64,000 nt of DNA from positions 1,093 through 65,092 of the forward strand of contig LWCA01000061.1 in NCBI GenBank assembly GCA_001642005.1, read 5' to 3'. A program made the translations under genes and the position numbers. Numbering within the stretch: the first letter of the stretch is position 1; each line of letters begins with the position of its first letter. The DNA is from Intoshia linei (lineage: Eukaryota; Animalia; Orthonectida). The notes beneath the pieces were generated by a model. The model worked only from the letters and a program-made list of their open reading frames with translations. It did no database searches and was not told the origin of the DNA. This document shows positions 6,724-29,490 of this stretch, in pieces.

Positions 6724-9700
6724 ATGGACCAAGATAATTCAGAATTAATTTCTAATAATGGTTCATTTTCTAAGGAATTATCTACCCATGACAGCACTTG
6801 TCTCGATATAAATGAAAATGACGAAAAATTCCATTTGCTTTCCAATTCAAATATTAAACAGCCTTCATTTAAAAATAGACTGATACGTGCTTACAAAAAA
6901 TTAATCATTATCAGCTCTGAACTGACATTTTTCTTATTCAAAGTTGCATCTTCCATGTATGATCCAACCGTTCGCCTATCTGCTTATGACAAGGTTTGCG
7001 TGTATGATTTTAATATTGATAGGGATATTTGCAATTCTCATGTCACCAATCATTTTTCAAATTCCTTCAAAAAGGTTCTCAATCGCGATGTTCAAAAATT
7101 GGCAGCATGGCATAATTTTATTTATCGCATGCTGGTTAATTTACCAGCCATTGTTATATCCTTGTTTACTGGACCATGGAGCGATAAGGTAAATTTAAAT
7201 TCATTGTAAAGTTAAAATTTAGCTGAATGCATGTATGGTTCCTGGTATAGTGCAGTGATTCCTAACCTATGGGTATTTACCCACGAGTGGGTAATTTGAT
7301 ATTTTTCAAAGGAAATAAACAAAATTAGTTTTTAAAAAATGGGAATTTTTTTATTTTTTTTCCGTCGCATGCAATGACGTATTATATAGTAGTCATATAA
7401 TAAATGAATATCGCTACGTACATATAACATTGAATATCTTTGTGTGTTACAGTTCATTTATAAAATTACCAGTCGTAAAATTTAATAAAAGTCAATATCT
7501 AATGCAGATTTTCGCAGGTATCATGAATGGCAACCTCAAAAAAGTGCATTTTCATAATAAAAACTCCAGATTATCCTTTTATTAAAAAATAAAAATAGTT
7601 ATAGAATTTTTTAAAAAAATTACAGTTGATACAGTTATATCTAGTTAACACACGCAAAAAACTTGAATCTGAAAAAGTGACGCCTTCACGACCAAAAAAG
7701 CACTTTATTATTAATTTTTTTATCTGGAAACTATTTTATTATCAAAAAAGTCATATTTTGATTATACGTGACAAAAAATAATAAATGGTTTTTATCTTAT
7801 CTTAAGCCGATATGTTCCAGAAAGTTAAAAATACAGATTCAAAGTAACATAATAATGGCATATTTTGAGCTCTGAGCAATTCTGCTAATAAGCTGATTCA
7901 ATTGATCCTGAAAAATGTCTTTAATTCGACTACATACTGTATCATTTAAGAGAGGTATTTTCCTTAAATTTTCACCGGATTTCATATCATACAATGCATT
8001 TTTTTTCATAATTATTAAAGTTGAAGGTAAAATCAATTTTCACCAATAGTAAAAAGCATGTTTTCTTTTGCAATAAGATATTTCATCAAATATTTTTCAT
8101 CAAGTAAAACGTGTTTTTTTAAATAATAAAATTTTGATTAACTATTACACGGTGTAACAAAATGAAACTTTTTTTGAAGATTTTAAAAAATATGAAATAA
8201 TTAACGGTCCGAAAATTAAAAAAAGAAGATTATTCTGATAGAGCTTATTCGAGTTGTTATAAATACAAAATTTCAACCCCAGAAATTGACGTATTTCCGG
8301 TGAAAAATAATTTTTAATTTATTATCAACCAATATTTTTTAAATATTTCGATTAAAATAAAAATTGAAAATGTAAATTTGATCCTACAATTTTAAAAATA
8401 AAGTGTATTGAACGTTACAAATTTCCAATAAAGAAATATACACCGCAGATGTTATTTTTATTGCATTTCTCATGCATGGTGTAATCATTCAGCGAGCTAG
8501 GGGAGCAGTGCCTGCAACGAAATGATATAGTTAATATCGAATTATCTGATTATGCCTCTTTAAAATACATTATTAACATGACAAAAGAGTCATTTATTAT
8601 TAATGTAACGAATTTAATATAAATGAGGATTAATAAGACCAGTAGCAGATCTAGGTGGGTGCAGGGGTGGCCGCCCCCTGGCGTTACAAATGTGGAAAAT
8701 AAGTATTTTAATTTGTGTAATAACATTGTGAAAAATTAACAAATTTTTCTAGTACCCATTATTTAGACTGACCATATTTTTGTCGTACTAAAAGTAGTAC
8801 TTTTATTGCTTATAAACAAAATATGTTTTTGATTAATTTTTGATTAGAAAAATTAACATTTAAGTTAAAGTTCAATTAATAAGTTTATTTAGTTGTGAAA
8901 AGTACGTCGAAAGTACGATTTTGGAACAATGAAAAATGTCGTACTTCTGGTCGCACTACATTATTTACGTTTTATGTATATAAGGATAATTTATCATTAA
9001 TCTAATTATCAATTTAAATATATTATAATATGTATGCTTTTGGCACACTAATAATTATAATTTTTTTTAGGGGACTTTAAAAAAATATATTACTAAAAAG
9101 GGGCGGTAGACAAAATTGAGTTTGTGAACCCCTGCTTTAAATCATTAAGACATTTTACATGCAATCTCCTAGTTTGAATATTAATATATAATGTTTTTAA
9201 ATTTAGATTGGACGACAAATACCTCTAATGGGCAGTATAACTGGACATATATTAGCAATGCTCGTGTTCATAATTTCACTATTTGCCAAATCATATTATA
9301 TGGTATTTTTTTCTTTGGCAAGTTTTATAATTGGAATATCAGGACGATCTTCAATAACGACATTTTCAGTATATAGTCACGTTTCCGATAATACATCCGT
9401 CAACACTCGAACATTTCGAATTGGAATGCTGTCTGGGTGTGGTTACATGGGACTATGCATTGGATCTCTTTTAGTAGCATTATTATCTCCTTACATTGCC
9501 GTCTATTATATACTTGCCATTGTTATATTTTTTTTAATACTATGTTTGCTAACGGTATCGTTTTTTCTGGTACCATATGTCGGAGAAAATGATACACGGA
9601 TAGAAATGAAACAATATGACGCTCTAAATGAAAATAAAGATGATTTCGAAAAGAAGTTAAATGTTTTAACAAAAGGAGAAAGTAGTAACGAACAGTTTTA

Positions 9701-10430
9701 TTATGCCTGGTGGAATTTTAAAAAGAGAGTAAAAGAAAAACCAGATCAAGATACAAAAATTTCTGAAAATTGTAAAAGAACCGCAACCAGTGTAATGACA
9801 CTTTTCAAAAAACGTGAAAACTATCAACGGCTTTATCTCAACTTTTTGATCATTTTTGTTTTTTTACATCAAGCCTCAAAAGCATATCATATTGATGCAT
9901 TGTTAATGATTACTAAAAGCGAACCTTTTTTCTTTACTACGGCCCAATTTGGATACCTATTATGTATCACTTATATAATATTTGGGTTGGGTGCTCTTGT
10001 TTTGACACCATTATTTACAAAAGTATTAATGTTAAATGATGTGGTATTGCTTAGTTTTGGTTGTATGGCTAATTTTGTACGATTTTTGTGTTTGACTCTT
10101 TCAAAAGAAGTTTGGATGATTTACGCCAGTGAGTGTATCATTGGTGGGTCCCTAGTAATTGCAGCCTTAAAATCAATTTTGTCTAAACAAATTTCCGCGT
10201 CTGAATATGGATCAATATTTAGTATTGTAAGTGCAATGGAAACTGTGGGAAACCTGATGGGTTCAGTTATTTTTGCAACCATATACACTCTGATGCTCAA
10301 AAACGACATTTTGATTACACTGTGTTTTACATTCGAAATTTGTAGCTACTTTTTTATTCTCACCACCTCACTTACATTGCATTTTTTAATCAAATACAAA
10401 ACAAAAATTAATAAACAATGTAATATTTAA
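6724..10430 (+). CDS. MFS transporter, SLC46 (PCFT/SLC46A3)-like, ~562 aa, two exons (6724-7188, 9207-10430)
   Basis: Phase-0 intron 7189-9206 (GTAAAT...TTTAG) joins GPWSDK to IGRQIPL, forming MFS motif A (WSDxxGR). Multiple hydrophobic helices, a Cys-containing loop after TM1, C-terminal LKSILSKQIS-SEYGSIFSIVSAMET, and an N-terminal EKFHLL acidic-dileucine motif. Confidence 0.88.
7839..8080 (-). pseudogene. hAT Charlie/Buster (ZBED5/8-like) transposase fragment in the SLC46 intron
   Basis: IAKENMLFTIGEKLILP...LRKIPLLNDTVCSRIKDIFQDQLNQLISRI resembles the Buster KKPHTIGEELILP...IPLSNNTVSRRI block. hAT-like termini lie at 7253 (CAGTGATTCCTAACC) and ~9135, without a matching TSD. Confidence 0.8.
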
Positions 10431-13825: not shown

Positions 13826-16800
13826 TCATACATTTTTGAACTTTAGAATGGGTTTTACATCAGATAAATTAAAAAATTCATTAATTTGAGGTTCCTGTTC
13901 AATTTGATTTTGTTTGTTTTTATAGACAATAGAATTGGGTTCACTAAAACGACAATAAGGAGAAACGTCGAAATTTTGAGGTAAATCAGTATTGGGAGAC
14001 GATTTGTGTGACAATTCATCATTTGAAGAAAACGTTGAGGCTCTTTGAGAAGAATCGGAATTTCCATTCCATTTATAAAATTTTTCAATGCAACATTTAG
14101 CATTTTCAGAATAATTTCCATCGAAAAATTTTTCAGTTTGAAAATTTTCAGGAAAAGAAATTTCATTTGGAATCATTTGGTTGACATTGGAAATAATATT
14201 ATAAGATTGACGAATTTGATTAGGTGGGTTTGGTAAATTTTGATTAATATTAGTGGAATATTGACAAGATGGTGGTATATTTTTAATTCCATTGTGCGGT
14301 GGATCATTTTCACGTGGATAGTTTTGATTACCATTTACAGTGTAATTTCCAAATGAATTGTCGACATTGACAGAATTTGGTTGGTTAAATGTCCATAAAT
14401 TGAAAGAATTTTGGCAATTAGGGACAATTTCCGGGTTAAAATTATTATTATTAAATTTAAAAGGTGGAACTTGATTTGAAAACTGGTTATGTACTTTGTT
14501 TATGGGAATTTCTTTAAACTGACCGGTATTATAATTTGGGTTTGTTTGATATGGGTAATATCTTTTCAAAGAATACTGATAATTGATTTCCATTTTTTCA
14601 AAATTGGACATGGAAGGATATTTCATTTGATTAAAATTTTGATTTCGATAATTACAATTGGAGTATTCATAATTTTGATTATTTGTATTAACTTTGTATA
14701 GGGGTCTCGTAGGGTCTAATGTGTATCCTTGAAAATATTGCGCATCTTTTACAGGATGAGAATAAATGGAAGGATTTACAGTTTGAGGGTTGTAGGAATC
14801 GGGATAAACTGAATGTTTTATATCCAAATCAGCATTTGGCATTGTAGGAGTATGTTTAAAATTTAAAAGTTTATCTTGAACGACTTGACGCAGTTTACTT
14901 CTTTCCGGTTTGAATTTTTTTTTTAATTTTAAATTTGTTTTTTTCATCTGATTGGATTTGGTGCACTTTTTATTTTTTACTTTTACATCAACAGGTTCAA
15001 CTTGAAAGGTTACGTAAATGTTGGATTCAAGATTACGTTTATATTTTTCAATGTCTCTATTACAAATGAAAATGAAAATAAAATTTTCAATTTCGAATAC
15101 ACATTCTTTGCAATTTCGTATTGTGGCCAGATCCAATGGAGTTTGATTATAAACATTACGAAGAGATAAATCAGCGCCTTTGTTTAGAAGAAGTTTCAAA
15201 CAGGTTGTATTATTACACATTGCTGCAAAATGCAATGGTGTTTGTCTTTTATTATTGGCAACAGACACATTGGTAAATTTCGTGAGGATAAGGTTTAAAA
15301 TACTAGCATCTCCAGATATACTAGCCCAATGAATGGGTAAAGAATGATTCATGGTATCAGGTATATTCAAGTCACAATTTGCGTCAAATAAAAGTTGAAA
15401 TGTTGGATAAAATTTTAATCTACTGGCTAAATTAATAGGGGTCAATCCACCTTGGCATTTCAAATTGGTTTTTACAGAAGCTTCCAACAAAACGGCAACA
15501 GTTTTCGCTGATAAGTAATAAACTGCCGTATGTAACGGCGTGTAACCTTCATTATCCAAAATATTTACATCGGATTTATATTTTATCAGCACTTTAATGG
15601 TTTCAACGTCCATACATGATGCTGCAATATGCAATGCTGTTTCACCACTTGTACAAGGATAATTAATGTCGTTCATGGATTGCTGAATGGTACATTCAAT
15701 TTGCCCATTTATTAAACTGACGCATTCGTGTTTCATAGACATTACTTGTTTGGTTAAAATCAATTCCATTAACTTAGTTTGATTTGACCTAAGGACATTT
15801 GAAGGTAATTTTTTAATCTCGGGAATTATTTTTACGGGATAATTTCCATCGTCTTTATTCGGTATGGATAAATATGCACCATTATCAAGAGGCCTCAAAA
15901 GTTTGTCTAAATTGAGCAAATTTCTAGGGTTTTTAGTGGCGCTATGACCTGATGGATAATATGTCAAATTTAAAAGTCGTTTTCTAATTACGACTAGCAA
16001 TATAAACAACGATACTACCAAAATATTGACTGCCACAATAATACTATAACTATAATCACTTTTATTCAAATCTACAGTTTCTACATCGTAAATTTTTCCC
16101 TCGTGAGGTAAACCACTGACACGTTTTGCCACAGCAGAAAGCAAAAAATTTTCAGCTTCTTGTTCAGATTCTATAAAAGTAGATGCATTGGCATTATTAA
16201 ATATACGATGTACAATATTACAACATTTCTGTTTGGAAGATGGGCACATGGTGTCTTGTACCTCTTCCAAGAGAATAGAATTTACATGAAAAAGTTTTTT
16301 TAAATTTGCAGTAACATCATACATATCAATTTCCATTAATTGACATTCTATGAAAAACAAAATTGACAATTTAATGTCAATCTTTACATCTTTAGCAACA
16401 TTTCCGCAGTCAAAACCATCAAAATTACAAACACTTGAATTGCAGTCATCATCGCAGTAATTATTTTTAAATTTCAAATGACAATTGGACGAAGAACAAT
16501 GCTGCCAAGCTTTTTTATAAAAGTTTGTAGAAATGGCTTCACATTTGTATCCATTTACATAATTTATGCAAATTTTTTGTGAACCACAAATATTTTTATC
16601 ACAATGATTTATAACAATATGGCATTGTTTCCCAGTAAAACCTATGGGACAATCACAATAAAATTTCCCAGCATTTTCAATACACTTTCCACCATTAAAA
16701 CACATTTCGCAAGATACATGTTGACACATTTCACCAGCGTAGAAATGGCTACAAATACACATTGGAGTCACTTTAGAATTTTCCACCTTCATTAAACATT

Positions 16801-19800
16801 TACCATTCAAGCATTTTTTAAAACAAGAACCTCCACTTTTGAATTCACAGTTAAGTCCATAAAATTCATTTACACATTCACAAATATAACCCAATTTGTT
16901 ACTTGATCGATGACATTTTCCTTCATTTGAACAATTGTTACAATTTAGATTTACATTTTCACAAAGTTTACCGGAAAATCCATCGATGCATTTACACGTA
17001 AAATTTTTGTCAGGTAGTTCAATGCAATTTGAATTATTTAGACATGGACTATTTTCGTAACAAATATGTTTTTTCGCCAAGTCACAGTATAAACCTGTAA
17101 AAGTTGGCAAACATTTACATGTATAATTTGGTCGTTTTTCAGAATTCAGTTGACAATATTTATTACCGTCGCAATTTGAATAGTTGCAAATTTTTGAAGC
17201 ATGGAATTGGCAATTTTTCCCAAAATAGTTTGATTCGCATTTACAAATATAATCACCGTTTGATATTGACGTGCATTTTGAGTTGTTATGACAGGGTTTT
17301 TCATAACATTTACTCTCGATTATTTCACAAATTTTACCTAAAAATTCATTAGATATAAATAATTAGTAATAAAAAAATCAAAGTAACACTAAAAAAAAAA
17401 ATTTTCGACATTTCCCCAAAAATTAAATAAACTTTACGGTAGTAATACATACATTAAAAAAATTAAAGATTCTACAGTGTGAAAACCATACAAGTTGAAA
17501 ATGCTTGTCTTGCATCATAAAAATGAAATGTCTATAGAAAAAGTTTGACACAAGTAAAAAACTGAAAATTAGTGAATCGCATAGAAAAACTTGTAAATCC
17601 ATTAATTTTAGAAGAATTTTATTATTAGCTTATCTAATCTGAAAAATAAAATTTTAGTCATGAATGTATGGATTTCTCAGGCTGACATTTTTGTTTTACA
17701 TCAACTGAAATAGACTATCAAAATAATCTTCTTTTTTTTAAATTCTAGGACCATTAGATAATCCTTACTTATATAAAGTAAAATGGTTAAAAATGTATGT
17801 CTGTTTATTTATTTGTTAAAAAAGTAAAGGGAGTCGAGTTTTACAAATTCCATATTCTTATAACAGTTTTTCCAGAGTGATCTTTTATCAAAAATTTCAA
17901 TTTCAGAAATTAAGGTTAAAAACCACATTCTCCTTCGTTTTTAAATTCAAATATCTTCAATAATTATAAAAAATATACATTCTAATAAAAACTTTTAAAT
18001 TCATCCATACTATGATAATTACAATTTTATGATATCTTCACGGCTAAAACCACAAATTACCCTTTTTTGTAAAAATTAAGAAAGTCTTAGAATTTTATAC
18101 AACACAAATTCTGGGATTGTTTTTAAATTCATAAAAATTATCATAAATATTAACCACAAAAAAATATCTTTCTCAGTCAAAAACCCAGATTACACTTTTT
18201 TTTAAAAATGCAAACAACCCTAGAATTTAAAAAAAATAAAAGATGATACAGTTATATCCAGTTAATACACTCAAAATATTTCAATCTGATCAAGTGGCGC
18301 CTTCATGGTCAAAAAAGCACTTTAATATTCATTTTTTCAATTCGAAACTATTTTATTAAAACAAAAAATTTGAAATAATTAACGGTCCGAAAATTAAAAA
18401 AAAGATTATTCTGATAGAGCGTACTCCAGTTGATATAAATACAAAATTTCAACCCAGAAATCTACGCATTCCCAGTGAAAAATAATTTTTAATATATTAT
18501 CAACCATCTCTTTCAAATATTGGATTAAAATTAAAAATGAAAAGTAAATAATCATCCTACAATTTCAAAAAAAAATGCCCATTGAATGTCTACCCATTTC
18601 CAATACAGAAACATGGGGGGAAATCTATATAATTGATTTCTTCGAATTTGTTACGCAATTCCTATTTCTCAAATACAAATTTTAAAAAAATTTTAGTCTA
18701 AAACTACAACGAAGTAGAACTAAAAGTAAAACTTTTTTATTATCATTTTAATATTTATTACTAATAAATTATTAGTAATAAATAAATAATGAATGCTTTG
18801 CAATGTTGATAATATTATCTGAAATATGTATCTAAATTGCAAAATTTCTCAGATAATAAAAACGTGCCCTCTGCAAGCTAGGTGCTGTTGGTACGTAGTA
18901 CATAACAGTCCACTAGTTATTTAATATTATAATAATTCATTTTATCACAATACTAAAATGTAATAGTAATTATTCTAATTAATACTTATAAATCAATAAA
19001 TAGTATAGTGCATATTTGATCATAAAGTATAATTATTACCGGTCGTTCCTTCTGGACAAGTGCATTCAAAATCGCCAATTAAAGACTTGCAACCTCCATT
19101 GTGTAAACAAGGATTATTTTCACAATAATCGTAAAATTTTTGACAATATATACCAACATATCCATCATTACATACACACTTTGGATTTGATTTCTTTACA
19201 ACGCAGTACCTAATTTTTTTTTAAATATTAATAAATTAAATCTGACCACCAAACCACGACTCGCGATTTTTTTTTAAAATGATAAAATTCAAAAAAATGT
19301 AATATTTACAGGTTGAGTTGGTTACTTGGTAAGTTGAAATTACTGGTGATACATATATTTATGTACTACTAAATTCTCAAAATGTTACCCATTGATGCAT
19401 TTATAATTTTGACAAAAATTAGTGTGATATTCGCAATTTTCTCCATAATTATCTAAATTGTTCATAAATAAATTCAATTGAATATGTTAAATGTACCATC
19501 AACACATTGGCACATATATCCTTTGGTATTATTGTGATGCAAACAATGCCCACCAAATTGGCAAGGTTTAAGACTACATGGGTCCGTATAAATATCACAA
19601 AATTTTCCAGAATAATCTAAAAATAATAAGATTAAATATAAGTTTAAATTACTGAAATCGCAGTCACATTTATAACCACTGACTCCGTCACGCAGACCAA
19701 TACACAATGAATGACTGCTACATAAATTCTTTTTAAGACAAGGATCATTGTAATTATTGCATGTTTCTCCGGTATAATCTAAAAATACATTGTTATATTA

Positions 19801-22800
19801 TGAAAAAGAGTTTTAAGAATATATTAGTTAGACCAGTGGCGGATCTAGGATTTTCAGCGAGGGGGGCTAAATTCATATATTGTATTTAAATTGAAATTTT
19901 ATATTATGTATATTAAATATTTCTATCTATAATAATAATTTATATTTTTTTTCAAATTTTTATTCTATTAAATTTTTCAATGTTGACCATTCAACTGTTG
20001 AGTTGTTCAACTGCATACAAATCGACATTTGAGGCAGGTTGTCTTTCGATTATGAACAACGTTAAGACCGATAATTTAACTTAAACTGATGTTACTAACA
20101 TAAAAAATAAGACATAGATTAATGATTATATACATAAAACGTAAACGATTGGTCCTAGAAATTTTTTTTAATTTTTCACAATGATAATACACAAATTAAA
20201 ATATTTTAGAGCACATTTGTCACGCCAGGGGGCGGTCTTCCCTGCACACACCTAGATCCGCTACTAAGTTAAACATGTTAAATAATATAGTGCAACCACG
20301 TCAAACGATCAACTATTTAAAAATTGGAACGGCTACCCACGAATTTTACATGTAATCCTTACTTGTAAAATATACTACGCGATTTTTGTTTGTGTGTGTG
20401 TTCCACTTTATTTAAATAACTACCCGTCTTAGAATTTTATAAAGTCCACATTTCAATTACAGTTTTTTCCGGGAGTGTTCGAAAAATAAATTTCAACTTC
20501 GAAACTCACATCTTACGGGTCAAAAACCCCAATTGTCTTTTTTTTGAAAATCAAACGAGTTGAAGAATTTAAAAAAATATATACGCTGATACGGACTTTA
20601 AAATCATAAACATTATCATAATTTTAAATTTAAAAAAATTATATTGTCAGGGCCAAAACCACAAATTACCCTTTTTTTATGAAAAAAAGGCCTAGAATTT
20701 AAAAAAATTTACAGGTGGTACAATTGCATCCTGTTAACACACAAAAAAATTTCACTCCGAATAAGTGACGACTTCACGGTCAAAAATCATTTTAGTATTC
20801 ATATATTATTTCCAAAATATTTTATTTAAACAAAAAATGTAAAATAATTAACGGTCCGAAAATTAAATAAAAAGATTATTCTGATAGATCTTATTCCAGT
20901 TGGTATAAATACAAAATTTCAATTTTAGGAATCTACGCATTCCCGGTGAAAAATAATTTTTAATATATTATCAATTAATATTTTTCAAATATTTCGATNA
21001 AAAAATGTAAAATAATTAACGGTCCGAAAATTAAATAAAAAGATTATTCTGATAGATCTTATTCCAGTTGATATAAACACAAAATTTCAATCCAGAAATC
21101 TAAGCATTGCCAGTGAAAAATCATTTTTAATATATTATCAACCAATATTTTAATGTAAATCGATTAAAATCAAAAATTGAAAATGTAAATATTAATCCTA
21201 CAATTTAAAAAAAGTGCATTGAACGTCTACACATTTCCAATAAAGAATATAGGTGAAAATCTATATAATTCATTTCATTACTACGCTATTTTAAATTTCA
21301 AAAACCTTATTTTCAAAACACTTTTAATAAAATTTAAATAGAAACTACAACAGTGGTTCCTAACCGGGGTGCACAGAGCTATTTTCAATTTTTTTTCTAA
21401 ATGAGTCAAATTAATTAACTGATATTTTTATTATAAACATAAAGATTAGATATAAGACATAATTTCATCTTGTAAGTTCTATTTTGGTAATGGGGAATTT
21501 ATAATAAAAAATGGAACACAATGTATTAATTCTTTCGAGATGAATAATCAGCCTGAAATTTTGTAGTAGTGATGCGAATCATCAAGGATTTGAATTTGAC
21601 ATACAGCGTAGAAGCCACATGTTAGGTAATGAAAAACTTTTATTTTTGCTGAAATTGAAGTTATTTATGAAAATTTTCAGGATTGTATTGTTTTACTTTA
21701 TTTGTAACATTATAAACTCATTCTCTTAACACATTAAGAACATGACATCATAAAATTGTTTTTAAAGGTACACAAATAAAAATAAAATTAAGTGGGATTA
21801 ATTCACTTTAAATTAAAATGTAATGTGACACGATGGGTTCCTGGTAAAACAAGATTGAAAACCACTCCTTGAAATATTGGTAATAGTGCAAGTAACACAT
21901 TTTGGTAAAATTAAAAAAGTTAGCCCTCAGCAGAGCTAACTGTCGTTTCCACAAAGTACATAACAGCCAAGCTCGTATAATTATATAAAAATAAAAAACA
22001 ACCTATTGTGCATTCACAGTAATATGTGTCTTTTACATGATGGCATACACCCTGATTTTCACAAGGATTTGACCAACAAGCATTAGATAATAACAAACAA
22101 CTAAAGCCTTCAAATCCCGGTTGACAATCACAAACATAACCTCCCAAAATATCCCTACACGTACCTCCATTAAAACACAAAGGATTTTCGGTAGGATGAT
22201 CTAAATGAGACGTGAATTTAAATTACTAAGTTATTTACGATGTATACATTCAGGGTAGTCAATATCGCAAAGATCTCCCATAAAACCCATTGGACAATTA
22301 CACTGTGCATCTCCAGTTGCAAAATTAACAACACAGGTGGAGTTTCCGTAACATTTGTTGTCAAAATAACATTTATCTTTAAGTTCGCATTTTGAACCTA
22401 AAATAAAAAATTAGGAATCATTAAAACATTTTAATTTAATACCAGTCGACCCTTTAGGACAAAAACAATAATAATGGTTATTTTTTAAATAACAATCTCC
22501 TCCATTGCAGTACTCTGAATCGCATTCTTCATACTTTTTATCGCAAATGTCCCCATAATACTTTAATTCACAGTTACAATAAAAACCACCATGAACATTG
22601 ACGCATTGTCCATGTTGACAAATATTTGTATCACATTCATCAATGTCAGTTTGGCAAAATAAACCTATAAATCAATTATATATTGAACTAATAAAAATAT
22701 ATACCAGTAAACCCCTCATCGCAATGACAGCTGTAAGAATTGTTTATTGGAACGCATAAAGAATCATTTTCACATTCATTGTTTTCGCAATAATTAATTT

Positions 22801-25800
22801 TCTTTTCACAGTCAGCACCTGTGTACCCTAAACATATATAGGTATTACGATAATATCAACCTTCTAAGCAGACACATTTGTATGTATAATTTCCTGTCAC
22901 AATACATTCTATAGCGTGCAAACACTTGTGCGATACACATGGCTTCATTGATAATTCACACGTTTTCCCGTGCCATTGAGGTGGACATTCGCATCTAAAT
23001 TAAAAATAATGGTTAGGAAAATTATCAAATTACTCAAAATCTGCCAATAAATTTCTACATTTTCCATTGTGAAAACAGGGGTTCAGTTCGCATTCATTTA
23101 AATCATCCAGACAGCGTGGACCCGTCCATCCATCTTTACAATGACAAATAAACATGTCAAATGATATTTGTTCACATTTCCCATTTCTTTCACAAGGGTT
23201 AGGATTACACAATGACGACATTTCACAATATGAACCTATTCAAATATTTTTAAGAGTGAGATATAGATACCATGGAATGGATAATTGCAGAGACATGTAC
23301 CATCTTCACAAACACCGTCGTTCATACATAGACAATTGGATTCTTTTGGTTTGTAACAGTCTAAATTTTTAATTAATGTGAAAAAAATTTCTAGATGCAA
23401 ATTTTGGTTGAAATTAAGTTAACTCGACGTATTTAGCGATTTTACTAATTTATGATATTATAGATTTTTAAGATAATTGTGGTTAAAATTTGGTAGGGTT
23501 TTAAGGAAAGTTTTTTAAGCCAATTTTTAAATATGTTGAAAAAATTTTGCGACCAAATTAGTAGGGTTTTTAAGAGAACATTTGTTTTACTCAATTTTTA
23601 AAGATAATTATTGTCTAAATTTTGGTAGAGTTTTTAAGGGAACATTTTTTATCACTCAATGTGTAAAGATTTTGAAGATTTCTTAAAATGTAAAAATATT
23701 CCCTTAAAATCTTACAAAATTATAGTCCAAAAATTAAAGTCACTATATTACTATTTTATCAAATTTTCTTAATATTGCCTAGTATTTTCACTTTAATGGT
23801 CCGTTGTGAAAAAATGTGGGAACCCCTGAGTTATGATATTCAAGAATTTAAGAAATTTTGAAAAATTTCAAAGAAATGAATTATATCGATTTTCACCCAT
23901 ATTTCTTTATTGGAAATGTGTAGACATGTTCAATGCACAATTCAATTTTTTCAAATTCTCCAACTCGTATGATTTTAAAAAAAAGGAAAATTGGAGTTTT
24001 TAACCCATAAGATGTGAGTTTGGGAGGTTGAAATTGATTTCGCTAACACCCCTGGAAAAAAAACTGTAATTGAAATGTGGACTTTATAAAATTCTAAAAT
24101 TGGTAGTTATTGAAATAAACGGTAGCACATACATAAATAAATATTGCAAAGGATATAAATACATTATATTAACAATAATAATATGTAAATAGTAAATCCC
24201 AAAAGTATTTATCAAAGAATGGAAAATGTAAAACTTAATATACAATTTAATTTATATATATACAATTGTACAATGTAAGACACTAATTTTAATTATATAA
24301 ACATTAAGTTATTCCAAACCCAAATTTTTGAACAAAGCTCAAAATTTGGCTGAAGCGCAGCGAAGAGTATTATGTAATTTCGCTGAAGGAAAAAAAAATT
24401 TTTGGGGGTCTCTTTTTCAAAAAATAATAACAGTTTACATACAATTTTTATTGCAATCTTCAAAATGAATGCTTTAAATTTTTCATAACAAATAGCACAT
24501 TTCAAAATGACTTCATGATGAATACTTTAAAAAAAAAAACAAATGACACAACACAAAAGACAAGATCAAAATCAATTATTTTCGACAATTATATTTTTGT
24601 TGAGTTTTGGCCATATTAATAAGGTTATTTTGAGCAGGCTGTTTTAAGTAGTTCATAAAGTCTTTGCATTCCATGTTAAAGTTGATTCTTATACTTATTT
24701 CTGCTTTCACTAAACTTATTCTCATTTTATTTCGATCTTTTCTCCACACAGATTCCATAATTGAAAAAATTCGTTTCACAAAAGCATTGTTTACTGGAAT
24801 TGACAAAATTATTTTTTAGAAGCTATTTTTTTAATTTCTGAAATATTACATGAAAAAAATTATAGAATATAAATAAAATATGTCTGATCTGATGATTTTG
24901 ATTGAAATAATTACATTACCCTGAGTAATATCACTTAACCCTGAACCCTGAGTTGAATTTGAAAACCCGAATTCTCAGGTAGAAAATAACGCAGTTGGCA
25001 ACCATGTGAGTAACCCAAAAGTGGATGAGATTCTACAGTTCCTAATTCTTTCTAATACCCGTAACGGCAACACATAAAATAGTCCATACAATCATATTAA
25101 TTCCATTACATTTCATAAATCATATCCTTTTAAGGGTAATATATAAATCACAAGGACTTGCAATAAAACCTACTTTGATTCTATACAAAAACATTTCTCC
25201 CTACAATTAGTCGGCAAATGCAGAAATAAAATATACGTTACAATTTAAATTTTAAAACATACAAATGTCTTGTCAACTTGTGTAAATTTCCATGAAATAA
25301 TAAATGTATAAATCAATATAAGTACCATCTTTATCGCATGTACAATTTATGGAAACGGTGTAATCTTTGATGATGGGATTACATATAGCACCATCGATGC
25401 ATTTATTATCTTTATTATAACAAGGATTTACATATTGGCATAAATTTCCGATATAATAATCATTGTTGCATCTAAAAATAAGATTTATTAGAAAATACAA
25501 ATTATTTGCAAAAGATGATGTGGACAATGTAATTATTAAAGCGAAATAAGTATCATGAGAAAATGAGTAATAAGAGCCTGATATTAAAATTAAAGTTACA
25601 AAGTTATAAACATTTGTAAATAACCAATTATGAACCAATTTTATGATTTTCACATACATATAAAAATGTAACTGAAACATGAAAAGTTACTAATTTTACA
25701 ATGCAATTGTTTTACAATAGTTAATAATTATACGTTTTTTGTCAATTTTTTTTCAGTAATTTTATAAATGTTAAAATACGGTTCTATAAAATTATCTAAA

Positions 25801-26041
25801 ATTACTGGCATTGAACTTTGCTCAATACGACATTAACCGAATCATGCAAGCAAGGCAATCGATAGGGTATATCTTCAAATATTGAACGTTTATTTAATTT
25901 ATGGTGTATTGAAGTATAATTTGAATTGGTTTCATTGATATAGGTAATATTGTCAGGTTTAAAATTTACATATCCTGAAATTGGACTTGAGAAGGAATAT
26001 AATTTGAATATGTACAGAAACAGAAATATAAACAATTTCAT
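13826..26041 (-). CDS. Notch: Notch receptor, ~1833 aa, 14 exons
   Basis: Exons 26041-25806, 25471-25326, 23360-23271, 23235-23034, 22994-22861, 22827-22705, 22664-22443, 22397-22239, 22200-22003, 19778-19653, 19616-19497, 19452-19389, 19209-19040 and 17337-13826 total 5502 nt, all GT-AG and in frame. Architecture: signal peptide, ~23 EGF, one LNR, NOD/NODP-like region, TM + RKR, 7 ankyrin repeats in Notch order (GETALHIAA, GYTPLHTAV, GLTPINLASRL, PIHWAS, QTPLHFAA, QTPLDLA plus a degenerate first repeat), basic NLS, N/Q-rich and Ser-rich tail. Confidence 0.95.
17762..18916 (+). mobile_element. Complete non-autonomous Helitron (subfamily B, 1155 bp) in Notch intron 13
   Basis: A|TCCTTACTTATATAAAG ... 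GCTAGGTGCTGTTGGTACGTAGTACATAACAGTCCACTAG|T. Shows TC start, CTAG end, subterminal hairpin, A/T insertion site, and no TSD or TIR. Confidence 0.88.
19834..20266 (+). mobile_element. hAT MITE (433 bp)
   Basis: TIRs CAGTGGCGGATCTAGG / CCTAGATCCGCTACTA; 8-bp TSD AGTTAGAC/AGTTAAAC (7/8 match). Confidence 0.85.
20356..21350 (+). mobile_element. Helitron subfamily A copy, 3' end replaced by a hAT-like element (21351-~21867)
   Basis: A|TCCTTACTTGTAAAA...TACGCGATTTTTGTTTGTGTGTGTG start, colinear with 745-1490. Contains the assembly N at 20999. Confidence 0.8.
23460..23690. repeat. Degenerate ~58-60-bp tandem repeat in Notch intron 2
   Basis: Recurring AAATTTGGTAGGGTTTTAAGG...CAATTTTTAAA units (3-4 copies). 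A similar TTGGTAAAA...GGATTTTT minisatellite lies at 54260-54450. Confidence 0.6.
24400..25005 (-). mobile_element. hAT element with C-terminal dimerisation-domain remnant (24576-24810)
   Basis: ILSIPVNNAFVKRIFSIMESVWRKDRNKMRISLVKAEISIRINF matches the hAT SxPxSNAxxERxFS...RN.L motif. Terminus CATGGTTGCCAACTGCG on the minus strand. A shorter sister copy lacking the coding piece is at 40346-40720. Confidence 0.85.
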
Positions 26042-27003: not shown

Positions 27004-29490
27004 ATGAATATTGCAAATAATATTCTAATAAAAAAGTGTAAATGTATCTACATTACTCAATTGTATAAATCCTATTCAAAATTTGAAAATATACACAAAA
27101 AAAATTCCATTCAATTAACTGCTTTGCAACAACATCTTTTGTCAATTACATCTTCTTATATGTGTCTTTTTCACCCTGAAAGAGGAGGTAATATTTTGAC
27201 TTTCTCTTTACATATTATAAAACGTATACGTGTTTAAGAACGGCATTACAAATTATAAGAAATTAAATCAGCAGAAATTTAATTTCATACCAAATGTACC
27301 AATGTATTACGAAAAAAGTAATCCTCTTAAAATCTACCGTTTTGAGGAAAATTTTTGCGTGAGATACCCCGCCTTTTGTGGCACTGTGATAAAATTACGG
27401 CCCAAACCGGGGTCAGATTGTATAGTTATTGTGCCGGAAAAAATACGGGAAAATATTTTTAACTACTGAAATAAAAAATTTTCATTTTCGAAAAAAAGAT
27501 AATTTATTTGAAATACATGTATTTGCGTTAATTATCCTTACTTACAGTATATACAATTATAATCCTTGCGTATGTTAATGGTTGAAAATGCATGTCTGTT
27601 TATTTGTTTGTTCCAGTTGATTTGAGACAGTAAGGGGAGTCGAGTTTTACAAATTCCATATTCTTATAACAGTGTTTCCAGAGTGATGTTTTATCGCAAA
27701 TTTCAATTTTAGAAATTAAGGTTAAAAACCACATTCTCCTTCGTTTTTAAATTCAAACCCGTACAATAATTATAAAAAATATACATTCTAAGGAAAAGTT
27801 TCAAATTCATCAATATTATGATAATTTCAATTTTATGATATCTTCACGGCTAAAACCACAAATTATTCCTTTTTGTAAAAATTAAGAAAGTCATATAATT
27901 TTATACAACATAAATTCTGGGATGGTTTTTAAATCCATAAGTATTATCATAAATGGTAATTTTCACGGTGAAAAACCTAGATTACCATTTTTTTAAAAAA
28001 TGAAAACAGCCCTAGAATTTAAAAAAAATTACAGATGAGTTATATCCAGTTAACACACCAAAAATTTGAATCTGATAAAGTGATGCTTTCATGGTCAAAA
28101 AACCAGTTTAGTATTCATTTTTTTTTTATTGAAGAAACTATTTTATTAAAATAAAAATTGAAAAATTAACGGTCGTATAATAATAAAAAAAAATTATTCT
28201 GATACAGCTTATTCCAGTTGATATAAATACAAAGTTCAACTCTAGAAATCTACGCATTTCTGGTGAAAATTAATTTTTAATATATTATCAACCAGTATTT
28301 TTCAAATCTAACATTATGTAAAATTTAAAAGGTAAATTCATCCTACAATTTTTAAAAAAATTGGAATTTACTGTGTATCAATTTTAAATACAGAAATATG
28401 GATTTCAATCCCATCAATTTATTACTTCTGTTTTTATATCATTGCTATGTAATTTCTCATTTTCAAAAACTTAGTTTATAATCAAATGAAGTATAACTTT
28501 GTTATTATCATACAGATGTATTGAGATTTATATTATTTTAACAGTCCATGGGCAATCAAATTTGGGAAGCACTCCTTTAAAAGAGTGGCAATGGTGAATA
28601 GGAGCATATTTATTTAAGATTTTATTTTTTGGGTAGAATTAAAAAAGTCCCCCTCGGCAGAGCTACATACTGTTTGTACGATGTACATTACAGTCTAGCT
28701 TGTAGTATATAAAATAATGGGTTGTAAGTAATTGATAACTTAGATATGGTTGCCACATTTGGTGAAGTATCTGCATCTTGCTTTGTACAAAACCTGCACT
28801 CAAAAATGCTTAAAAATAAAATTGGTTGTAAAATTTTAAGGTTAACTCTCAAACTAGTTACCTCATTTTTTCAATCTTTAGAGAAAAGCCAATTTTGTCA
28901 ACTAAATATTTAAATATTGAATATGAAAAATTACGTTGTCTACCGAAAGACACATTCGGATACGTTTACTACCAGTTTATGAAATCTAATGTAATGGATA
29001 GATACAGTACTTTTATATTTTGTGCTTAATTATCCATAATGTTAAAATGGTTGTAGAATATAAATATGGACGACCGACCACCAATTCAGTTTGTTAATGA
29101 CGTTGAATTGGCTTACGTTATGCTTAGATATCGACAAATCCATGATTTTATACACACATTAACTAATCAACCTACTAATTTAATTGGCGAAATTACAGTA
29201 AAAATAATTGAAGCATATCAAACTAAATTACCAATGTGTGTATTAGGATCCATTTTTGCTCCGCTGCGATTAAAAAACAAGTAACTTGTATCAAATTTAA
29301 AATATAATTTAGACATTTTCATTTTTTTTTAAAGCACAATTTGTACTGGGCAATAAAGACTGCTGCAATGTCTCCACTATTCATCAACGTATATTACGAG
29401 AAAGAATGGAATACACCTATTAATGAATTACGTGACAGATTAAAAATTTACAATATACCAAATACACCAATGAAAAAATTGTATAAATAA
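27004..29490 (+). CDS. COQ4: Ubiquinone biosynthesis protein COQ4, ~263 aa, 5 exons
   Basis: Exons 27004-27187, 28744-28840, 28882-28990, 29057-29280 and 29313-29490 total 792 nt. Translation includes FHPERGDMVATFGE, LPKDTFGYVY, DRPPIQFVNDVELAYVMLRYRQIHDFIHTL...GEITVKIIEAYQTKLPMC (HDxxH-x11-E zinc motif) and NVYYEKEWNTPINELR. Confidence 0.96.
27535..28702 (+). mobile_element. Near-complete Helitron (subfamily B) in COQ4 intron 1
   Basis: A|TCCTTACTTA start; colinear with 17762-18916. The 3' hairpin CTGTTTGTACGATGTACATTACAG is followed by CTAGCTTG|T. Confidence 0.8.

What the first reader, a model, noticed from the sequence alone, without database searches (positions are those of the whole stretch)
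16060..16610. Minimal Notch negative regulatory region: one LNR, a half EGF, and no S1 furin loop
Seen, all inside one continuous exon so no exon can be hiding: the last EGF stops after 4 Cys (CDKNICGSQKICINYVNGYKC). It runs via EAISTNFYKKAW into a single LNR (WQHCSSSNCHLKFKNNYCDDDCNSSVCNFDGFDC), then NOD/NODP-like segments with no RxxR site between them, then KIYDV at the S2 position. Known: canonical Notch has three LNRs wrapping the HD domain to hide S2 until ligand pulls. The surviving repeat best resembles LNR-B (NOTCH1 PWKNC...CLFDGFDC), and NF..AW resembles the A/B linker plug. LNR deletion de-represses Notch. Inference: a naturally re-engineered mechanosensor that is low-threshold, ligand-independent or stabilised differently (extra Cys in MCPSSKQKCC). 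This is the strongest candidate for new biology in the window, and relevant to synNotch design.
Basis: partly seen in the sequence, partly recalled or inferred. Interest (0 to 1): 0.8.

Follow-up and report, generated by a model that had tools for sequence, protein, structure and literature searches.

The report
One-LNR Notch receptor of an orthonectid
The only Notch receptor gene of the tiny parasitic worm Intoshia linei has a juxtamembrane safety-catch region cut down to one LNR module (instead of three) on a shortened domain with no furin loop. This is a natural minimal version of a switch that is otherwise nearly invariant in animals, and whether it still works as a switch is untested.

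Summary
On the minus strand, one uninterrupted 1169-codon terminal exon (13829-17335) encodes, in order:
- EGF repeats
- an EGF that stops after Cys4
- an 11-residue linker
- one Pfam LNR (37 bits)
- a 117-residue cysteine-poor domain with no RxxR
- KIYDV 13 residues before the membrane span
- ankyrin repeats

The contig is Intoshia linei (orthonectid), not human. GenBank calls the protein 'EGF-related protein 1'.

A six-frame search of the whole 41.6 Mb assembly finds no other LNR, NOD or NODP, and no canonical NRR paralogue. DSL ligands, presenilin, an ADAM10-like protease, furin-like convertases and a weak CSL are present. Two AlphaFold models (pLDDT 63-65) give a beta-alpha-beta-beta-alpha-beta domain. 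Their top ten PDB matches are all Notch1-3 NRRs, at low TM-score.

- Small HMMs score the module as A/B-like (44 bits each) rather than C-like (30 bits), so it is not clearly LNR-B.
- 'NOD/NODP-like' is not detectable by Pfam.
- Leakiness or a low force threshold cannot be read from sequence.
- No orthologue, transcript or independent assembly could be found.

Verdict: a real, new variant of Notch, of moderate interest. The scan had already noted this same stretch in an overlapping window.

The parts
13829..17335 (-). Terminal exon of the Notch gene (P0001 residues 665-1833). It holds the last about 7 EGFs, half EGF, LNR, HD-like domain, TM, RAM region, ANK repeats and an N/Q-rich tail.
   Evidence: Continuous ORF. 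Exact match to GenBank model P0001.
19038..26041 (-). 13 upstream exons: signal peptide and EGF array (P0001 residues 1-664).
   Evidence: P0001 peptide mapped onto the window's frames. Pfam EGF hits. The exons were not joined by me.
16541..16603 (-). Half EGF: CDKNICGSQKICINYVNGYKC, Cys1-Cys4 only.
   Evidence: Cys spacing 4/5/8 as in the neighbouring EGFs, with no C-x-C after it. The model shows the EGF beta-hairpin.
16508..16540 (-). Linker EAISTNFYKKA, with T-N-F at the gatekeeper/plug positions of the NOTCH1 LNR-A/B linker.
   Evidence: phmmer alignment to NOTCH1 'FNDPWKNC'. Role of the plug residues from PMC3145759.
16406..16507 (-). The single LNR module, WQHC...FDGFDC. It has six Cys and all the invariant D/N/G positions of the family.
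   Evidence: PF00066 at 34.1 and 37.4 bits. Only LNR match in the genome. Invariant columns matched.
16055..16405 (-). 117-residue HD-like domain, predicted beta-alpha-beta-beta-alpha-beta, with no S1 loop and no RxxR.
   Evidence: Length 117 against 130-147 in homologues.
16220..16249 (-). Cys cluster MCPSSKQKCC. C-x6-C spacing equals that of the NOTCH1 HD disulfide.
   Evidence: Placement relative to the canonical pair is ambiguous.
16082..16096 (-). KIYDV, the S2-equivalent strand, 13 residues before the TM.
   Evidence: Aligned to P-I-Y-x-V / KIEAV of homologues. Predicted last beta-strand.
15986..16042 (-). Transmembrane span IIVAVNILVVSLFILLVVI, followed by RKR.
   Evidence: Sequence and hydropathy.
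15953..15964 (-). TYYP at the place of the RAM hydrophobic-W-hydrophobic-P motif (no Trp).
Evidence: Sequence only.
15071..15733 (-). Ankyrin repeat domain.
   Evidence: Pfam Ank families. Single-stretch alignment to the NOTCH1 ANK structure 2qc9, E 5.9e-22.

Best explanation
This is the genuine and only Notch receptor gene of the orthonectid Intoshia linei. Two in-frame losses have compacted its negative regulatory region.

- One loss removed the second half of the last EGF together with LNR-A. It left the first EGF half joined to a remnant of the LNR-A/B linker.
- The other loss removed one further LNR, so a single calcium-type LNR sits directly on the heterodimerisation-like domain.
- That domain is itself shortened to a four- or five-stranded SEA-like alpha/beta sandwich. 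It has no S1 loop, so the receptor is a single uncleaved chain.

Inferred, not shown: it still works as a proteolytic switch. A DSL ligand binds the EGF array. The linker and the one LNR cap the last strand (KIYDV) until they are displaced. An ADAM10-like protease then cuts there, gamma-secretase releases the ankyrin-bearing intracellular part, and that part acts with CSL. How tight the autoinhibition is cannot be told from sequence.
For: Gene and architecture:
- Continuous 1169-codon exon in 26% GC DNA, with no gaps or repeats at the junctions.
- EGF/LNR/ANK architecture.
- One LNR above the Pfam cut-off, carrying every invariant residue of the family.
- Even cysteine numbers in each module.

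No alternative receptor in 41.6 Mb: no other LNR, NOD, NODP or NRR-like paralogue.

Partners present:
- two DSL domains
- CSL
- presenilin
- ADAM10-type metalloprotease
- a MIB_HERC2 domain

Homology of the juxtamembrane domain:
- PDB phmmer alignments run from the LNR into HD-N of NOTCH1/2.
- The alpha3-beta5 stretch aligns to an HD profile and ranks first against 2000 shuffles.
- Two AlphaFold models built from different alignments both have Notch1/2/3 NRRs as their ten best Foldseek hits.

What is kept matches what matters most in human NOTCH1. The LNR-A/B linker and LNR-B give most of the contacts that protect S2. LNR-A makes few contacts and LNR-C binds most weakly (PMC3145759). S1 loops are structurally dispensable (PMC2726630).
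Against: - No RNA, read-level or orthologue evidence could be obtained.
- The models are of low confidence (pLDDT 63-65, TM 0.25-0.42), so packing of the LNR on the S2 strand is not shown.
- HD similarity taken alone is marginal: 9.4 bits, tied with the best of 2000 shuffles.
- The RAM motif lacks its Trp (TYYP), and CSL matches only weakly. Canonical nuclear signalling may therefore be altered.
- In fly and human Notch, lesions of LNR-C, of the gatekeeper and of the HD disulfide activate the receptor (PMC13436963, PMC3145759). By analogy this NRR could be leaky.
- Neuralized was not found.
Confidence: 0.6

Rival explanations
1. De-repressed receptor. The gene is real, but the stripped NRR no longer hides S2. 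The receptor would then be shed constitutively or at very low force. Signalling would be set by expression level, trafficking or ligand cis-inhibition rather than by a mechanical gate.
For: - Two of three LNRs are gone, and the first gatekeeper position is Thr instead of Leu.
- The HD is 13-30 residues shorter than in homologues.
- Removing LNR-A, the linker and LNR-B activates NOTCH1 (PMC3145759).
- LNR-C, gatekeeper (LGI-AAA) and HD disulfide (CC-SS) lesions are gain-of-function in the fly (PMC13436963).
- Neuralized was not detected.
Against: - The retained LNR keeps every calcium-site and cysteine position, and the linker keeps N-F and W-x-x-C. That argues for continued selection on an LNR-HD interaction.
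- DSL ligands and a Mindbomb-type domain are kept.
- A constitutively active Notch is usually deleterious.
Confidence: 0.22
2. Decaying or re-purposed gene. The protein is made but no longer signals through CSL. It might act as an adhesion or EGF-scaffold protein, and the NRR is eroding under relaxed constraint in a genome that has lost many developmental genes.
For: - RAM Trp lost (TYYP).
- Weak CSL match.
- HD unrecognisable to Pfam.
- The LNR is missed in full-length scans.
- I. linei is fast-evolving, with fewer than 10,000 genes and about 64% of the BUSCO Metazoa set (PMC11521371).
Against: - An 1833-codon frame is intact in 26% GC DNA.
- Cysteine frameworks are regular across about 21-22 EGFs and the LNR.
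- The ANK domain aligns end to end with NOTCH1 ANK.
- Presenilin and an ADAM10-like protease are kept.
Confidence: 0.12
3. Assembly or annotation artefact. LNR-coding DNA was collapsed or deleted during assembly, and the true gene has three LNRs.
For: It is a draft assembly of 3520 contigs. No independent contig, transcript or orthologue could be found to cross-check it.
Against: - Both junctions lie in unique, gap-free sequence inside one long ORF, and the frame is kept.
- LNR modules of one Notch are too unlike each other at the DNA level to collapse.
- Two separate in-frame losses with even cysteine counts are not what a collapse produces.
- No stray LNR exists anywhere else in the assembly.
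Confidence: 0.06

Closest known systems
Canonical Notch negative regulatory region (human NOTCH1/2/3; PDB 3ETO, 2OO4, 4ZLP)
   Same: - Same place in the protein, between the EGF array and the TM.
- An LNR with the same Cys and Asp/Asn framework.
- A W-x-x-C linker.
- An alpha/beta HD-like domain.
- An S2-like K-I-x-x-V strand about 13 residues from the membrane.
- These are the best structural matches of both models.
   Different: - One LNR instead of three.
- First LNR Cys to TM is 148 residues, against 242-271 in complete homologues.
- No S1 loop or RxxR.
- No Pfam NOD/NODP signal.
- Thr for the gatekeeper Leu.
- The preceding EGF is truncated after Cys4.
Engineered Notch variants: S1 loop-out NOTCH1/2 and LNR-deletion constructs
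   Same: Like the loop-out receptors, it has no furin loop. Like the LNR-deletion constructs, it lacks LNR modules.
   Different: The engineered LNR-A + linker + LNR-B deletions are constitutively active (PMC3145759). Here the linker-like segment and one LNR are kept, and the protein is a product of natural selection. Loop-out NOTCH2 signals normally (PMC2726630).
Short Notch receptors of other reduced or early-branching animals (C. elegans LIN-12/GLP-1, sponges, placozoans, myxozoans)
   Same: Reduction of the ectodomain is known. EGF number ranges from 10 to 36. NOD/NODP is undetectable in sponges and some bilaterians (PMC2770060, PMC12166595).
   Different: Those surveys treat three LNRs as the rule. 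I found no report of a bilaterian Notch with one LNR. A Monosiga 'Notch-like' protein with 2 LNRs is not considered a true Notch (PMC2770060).
SEA-domain juxtamembrane modules and synthetic minimal Notch cores
   Same: A compact beta-alpha-beta-beta-alpha-beta sandwich next to the membrane carries a protease-sensitive strand (predicted topology).
   Different: No SEA sequence signature was tested or seen. The comparison rests on low-confidence models and on my own knowledge of SEA and synNotch work.

Membership tests
Notch receptor (diagnostic domains EGF + LNR + ANK, after Gazave et al. 2009, PMC2770060) | Tandem EGF repeats in the ectodomain | tested here: met
   Pfam EGF, 13 stretches, E 4e-59. 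About 21-22 six-Cys units.
Notch receptor (diagnostic domains EGF + LNR + ANK, after Gazave et al. 2009, PMC2770060) | At least one LNR (PF00066) between the EGFs and the membrane | tested here: met
   34.1 and 37.4 bits against a cut-off of 21.2.
Notch receptor (diagnostic domains EGF + LNR + ANK, after Gazave et al. 2009, PMC2770060) | Single TM followed by an ankyrin repeat domain | tested here: met
   Hydrophobic span 15986-16042. Ank families E 1e-25 to 1e-29. Aligns over its whole length with NOTCH1 ANK 2qc9.
Canonical Notch NRR | Three LNR modules (A, B, C) | tested here: not met
   One module only. Just 4 further Cys lie between it and the TM. No other LNR in the genome.
Canonical Notch NRR | HD domain recognisable as NOD (PF06816) plus NODP (PF07684) | tested here: not met
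   No hit at E<=10 on the isolated region or genome-wide. Only weak profile similarity and fold similarity.
Canonical Notch NRR | S1 furin site (RxxR) in a loop of the HD | tested here: not met
   No R..R or [RK].[RK]R in residues 316-410. Furin-like convertases do exist in the genome. This feature is not universal in Notch (PMC2726630).
Canonical Notch NRR | S2 strand about 12-14 residues outside the membrane, covered by the LNR-A/B linker | tested here: inconclusive
   KIYDV aligns with the S2 strand. A T-N-F..W linker is present. Covering cannot be judged from models at pLDDT 63-65.
Canonical Notch signalling pathway | RAM hydrophobic-W-hydrophobic-P motif after the TM | tested here: not met
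   TYYP at residues 463-466, no Trp. Read from sequence only.
Canonical Notch signalling pathway | Ligand, S2 protease, gamma-secretase and CSL encoded in the same genome | tested here: met
   DSL 58.9 and 47.6 bits. Reprolysin_2 34 bits. Presenilin exons. LAG1-DNAbind 26.9 bits, just over the cut-off.

The most novel reading that the evidence does not exclude
A natural minimal mechanosensor. One LNR plus a remnant of the A/B gatekeeper linker, sitting on a four-stranded SEA-like domain without S1 cleavage, would be sufficient for ligand-gated autoinhibition of Notch. That would define the smallest working NRR and show which of the three LNRs' contacts are truly needed.
Probability: 0.3. Interest if true: 0.7.

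Novelty: new variant of a known kind. Interest (0 to 1): 0.5.

Why it matters
The three-LNR negative regulatory region is treated as a constant of Notch, from sponges to humans. It is the site of leukaemia mutations, the target of therapeutic antibodies and the core of synNotch designs.

A receptor that has kept ligands, proteases and ankyrin domain while shedding two LNRs, the S1 loop and part of the HD is a natural deletion experiment. If it is still gated, it shows the minimal set of contacts needed to hide S2 and offers a roughly 150-residue module for synthetic receptors. If it is leaky, it shows how an animal with very few cells can live with a different mode of Notch control.

It also illustrates an annotation blind spot. 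The LNR is missed in full-length Pfam scans, and the gene is not labelled Notch in GenBank.

Tried and rejected
Searches for relatives, all negative:
- Word-index search with the exon, region 250-760: swamped by ankyrin proteins. Its only use was to identify P0001 and the species.
- Word-index searches with the NRR, in the length classes of full-length proteins and of fragments of 116-369 aa: nothing but the protein itself. So there is no orthologue, no transcript fragment and no independent assembly.
- Full HMMER scan of 1.84 billion representatives with the NRR: 36 hits, all through the LNR and all canonical Notch or LNR proteins. There is no second one-LNR receptor and no close relative.
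- ESM Atlas: no usable hit.

Paralogue and hidden-sequence checks:
- Canonical paralogue: rejected. The better ANK match on contig C1562 is a soluble ankyrin protein with no EGF or TM.
- Hidden frameshift at the half EGF: the other two frames run into stops within 7 codons. A 12-nt identity with an upstream EGF in a different frame may be a relic, but about 0.3 such matches are expected by chance.

Typing and structure:
- Assigning the LNR to class A, B or C: not resolved.
- Assigning HD strands: two readings remain. Either the beta2-beta3 hairpin plus S1 loop was lost, or the canonical disulfide loop was lost.
- VIA-align second look: the HD-like part matches many ferredoxin-like folds at Z about 7, so it does not discriminate.

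Literature: Mikhailov et al. 2016 and Sanchez-Irizarry et al. 2004 are not held.
Full report
**Source and gene**

The window is 26% GC throughout. It is contig C2126 of a 41.6 Mb, 3520-contig assembly. The protein it encodes is identical to GenBank 'Epidermal growth factor-related protein 1 [Intoshia linei]', 1833 aa (P0001). The DNA is therefore from an orthonectid and is not human.

Matching P0001 to the window gives 14 exons on the minus strand. The last is 13829-17335 and holds 1169 codons. Every search of my own used single-exon references or the database protein P0001.

**Checking the observation**

Translating 17350-13826 on the minus strand gives one open frame. The features, numbered from 17350:
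- regular EGFs up to Cys243
- CDKNICGSQKICINYVNGYKC, with Cys at 250, 255, 261 and 270, the 4/5/8 spacing of Cys1-4 of the neighbouring EGFs, and no C-x-C after it
- EAISTNFYKKA
- WQHCSSSNCHLKFKNNYCDDDCNSSVCNFDGFDC (residues 282-315)
- 117 residues holding only four Cys (336, 369, 376, 377) and no R..R or dibasic-R motif
- KIYDV (419-423)
- a hydrophobic span (437-455) followed by RKR
- TYYP (463-466)
- ankyrin repeats

Pfam finds one LNR: 34.1 bits in the exon and 37.4 bits in the isolated region, against a cut-off of 21.2. It finds no NOD or NODP, even at E<=10. The LNR carries every invariant column of two family alignments: six Cys, D30, N34, D41, G42 and D44 in A2 numbering.

The only N of the window lies in an intron at 20999. 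No meaningful DNA repeats lie near the junctions. Only the wording 'NOD/NODP-like' goes beyond what the family models can see.

**Is another, canonical Notch hiding in the genome?**

No. Six-frame searches of the whole assembly give these results:
- one LNR, which is this one
- no NOD and no NODP
- with a complete small canonical Notch as query (P0124: three LNRs, NODP, ANK), matches only to EGF and ANK regions and none to its residues about 270-560, the NRR

The strongest ANK match in that search (contig C1562) is a soluble ankyrin protein with no EGF or TM.

**Pathway context**

| Component | Result |
|---|---|
| DSL domains | two, 58.9 and 47.6 bits, 1.7 kb apart on C1942 |
| CSL DNA-binding domain | weak, 26.9 bits |
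| Presenilin | found in pieces |
| ADAM10/17-type metalloprotease | 34 bits |
| Furin-type P domains | three |
| MIB_HERC2 domains | present |
| Neuralized | none |

The proteases and ligands of canonical signalling exist. The missing S1 site is therefore not explained by a lack of convertases.

**Relatives**

No close relative was found:
- Word-index searches in three length classes return only the protein itself for the NRR.
- A full HMMER pass over 1.84 billion representatives returns 36 hits at E<=1e-3. All come through the LNR and all are ordinary Notch or LNR proteins.
- The ESM Atlas gave nothing.

Hence I have no orthologue from another orthonectid, no transcript-derived fragment and no independent assembly. 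The sequence rests on one draft assembly. This is the main gap in the evidence.

**Which LNR survives?**

The evidence does not settle this.
- phmmer against PDB aligns the module to NOTCH1 LNR-B together with the preceding F..W..C linker (21.9 bits). It also aligns it to LNR-C running on into HD-N (24.4 bits), and only weakly to LNR-A (6.5 bits).
- I built class-specific HMMs from nine three-LNR homologues. They classify 26 of 27 left-out modules correctly, usually by 20-40 bits. They score the Intoshia module A 43.6, B 44.4 and C 29.7.
- MAFFT aligned it to LNR-B in one alignment. In another it aligned it as a chimera with an LNR-B head and an LNR-C body.

So the module is A/B-like in sequence but sits where LNR-C normally sits. 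The clear B-type marks are W-x-x-C before Cys1 and Phe in FDGFDC.

The linker reads S-T-N-F-YKKA-W, against S-L-N-F-ND-P-W in NOTCH1. There, L1482 and F1484 fill the void between strand beta5 and helix alpha3, and N1483 bonds E1720 (PMC3145759). The fly gatekeeper is L-G-I (PMC13436963), and my invertebrate homologues read SLG(I/V)NPW. The conserved elements are thus a hydrophobic residue and the Trp, both kept here, while the gatekeeper Leu is Thr.

**The HD-like domain**

Measured the same way in all proteins (last LNR Cys to TM), it is 117 residues, against 130-147 in five homologues. The distance from first LNR Cys to TM is 148 residues, against 242-271 in the three complete ones.

Sequence similarity is faint:
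- The PDB alignments extend through beta1 and alpha1.
- A profile of homologous HDs aligns STFIESEQEAENFLLSAVAKRVSGLPHEGKIYDVETV to the alpha3-beta5 part at 9.4 bits. That ranks first of 2001 but ties with the best shuffle.

Two AlphaFold2 models from different alignments have mean pLDDT 65.5 and 63.0. The LNR scores 70-86 and the HD 50-77. The second model gives beta1 (IKLSILFFIE), alpha1, beta (NSILLE), a Cys-rich turn, beta (KCCNIVHRIF), alpha (EQEAENFLLSAVAKRV) and beta (GKIYDVETV).

In both cases the ten best Foldseek matches in the whole PDB are Notch1, Notch2 or Notch3 NRRs. E-values are 2e-4 to 1e-3 and 4e-5 to 4e-3, and probabilities 0.93-1.0. TM-scores are only 0.25-0.42, so the mutual placement of LNR and HD is not reliable. 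Taken alone, the HD part matches many ferredoxin-like sandwiches at Z about 7.

Two readings of what was lost remain open:
- The beta2-beta3 hairpin and S1 loop were lost. SILLEEVQDTMC-x6-C would then be the canonical beta4 plus HD disulfide, which has the same C-x6-C spacing as NOTCH1.
- The canonical disulfide loop was lost, and the Cys cluster is a new staple in the beta2-beta3 turn.

In either case there is no room for an S1 loop.

**How it probably arose**

Two separate in-frame losses are needed. One runs from after Cys4 of the last EGF to the A/B linker. The other removes one LNR.

Directly after Cys4, 12 nt are identical to the sequence after Cys5 of an upstream EGF (...CICSHFY...), but in a different frame. 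This may be a frameshifted relic of the lost EGF half. About 0.3 such matches are expected by chance in 900 nt, so I only note it. The alternative frames hit stops within seven codons, so a sequencing indel is not hiding an intact EGF.

**How it most likely works**

Shown: the architecture, the single LNR, the absence of a furin motif, and the presence of the pathway partners.

Inferred: a single-chain receptor with no S1 cleavage, in which the last beta-strand (KIYDV) is shielded by the linker and the one LNR. On ligand engagement it would be cut by the ADAM10-like protease and then by gamma-secretase.

The parts kept are those that contribute most to protecting S2 in NOTCH1. LNR-A makes few HD contacts and LNR-C is the most weakly bound (PMC3145759). 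S1 loops can be removed without structural damage, and loop-out NOTCH2 signals normally (PMC2726630).

Against a tight gate:
- Lesions of LNR-C, of the gatekeeper and of the HD disulfide are gain-of-function in flies (PMC13436963).
- The gatekeeper Leu is lost here.
- The RAM Trp is missing.

My weights are: gated switch 0.6, leaky or ligand-independent 0.22, decaying or re-purposed 0.12, artefact 0.06.

**Comparison and novelty**

By the diagnostic domains used in comparative work (EGF, LNR, ANK; PMC2770060) this is a Notch. It fails three features of the canonical NRR: three LNRs, NOD/NODP and S1.

Published surveys describe reduced ectodomains and undetectable NOD/NODP in several lineages, but treat three LNRs as the rule (PMC2770060, PMC12166595). 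Full-text searches found no mention of a one-LNR Notch or of Notch in orthonectids. The genome paper itself is not held, so I cannot exclude that it remarks on this.

The gene has been public since 2016 but is not labelled Notch. The Pfam LNR hit disappears when the full-length protein is scanned (and the precomputed list).

I class it as a new variant of a known kind, with interest 0.5. It is a clear exception in a very conserved module and a ready-made construct for testing minimal autoinhibition. But it comes from a lineage where reduction and fast evolution are general (PMC11521371), and there is no functional, transcript or orthologue support yet. The scan had noted the same stretch in an overlapping window (s1-728670).

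Noticed in passing
P0001 (whole protein) versus window 13829-17350: The Pfam LNR hit is present when the terminal exon or the NRR alone is scanned. It vanishes when the full 1833-aa protein is scanned, and it is absent from the protein's precomputed Pfam list. This is probably why GenBank names the gene 'EGF-related protein 1' and not Notch.
   Followed up: partly
L002/L003 (G000:C1942:8133-10032, minus strand): Two DSL-domain matches above the Pfam cut-off lie 1.7 kb apart on the same strand. They are either tandem Delta-like genes or one unusual ligand gene.
   Followed up: no
window 16527-16544 and 16739-16756: A 12-nt identity (AGCCATTTCTAC on the coding strand) follows Cys4 of the half EGF and also Cys5 of an upstream EGF (CICSHFY), read in different frames. 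It may be a frameshifted relic of the lost EGF half, or chance (about 0.3 expected).
   Followed up: partly
window 17809-17928 and 27600-27734: Two near-identical short ORFs (MWFLTLIS.IEI.DK.SLWK.CYKNMEFVKLDS), one in the last Notch intron and one upstream of the gene. This looks like a dispersed repeat family.
   Followed up: no
window 15953-15964: TYYP stands where the RAM hydrophobic-W-hydrophobic-P CSL-binding motif is expected. The genome's CSL DNA-binding domain also matches Pfam only weakly (L005/L006, 26.9 and 22.9 bits).
   Followed up: partly
window 9228-10430 (+): An intronless 400-aa ORF with many hydrophobic segments (transporter-like) lies just downstream of the Notch 3' end.
   Followed up: no
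whole genome G000: No Neuralized NHR domain was detected. MIB_HERC2 domains occur at C2318 (in a 2372-aa open frame), at C3393 and, below the Pfam cut-off, at C1988.
   Followed up: no
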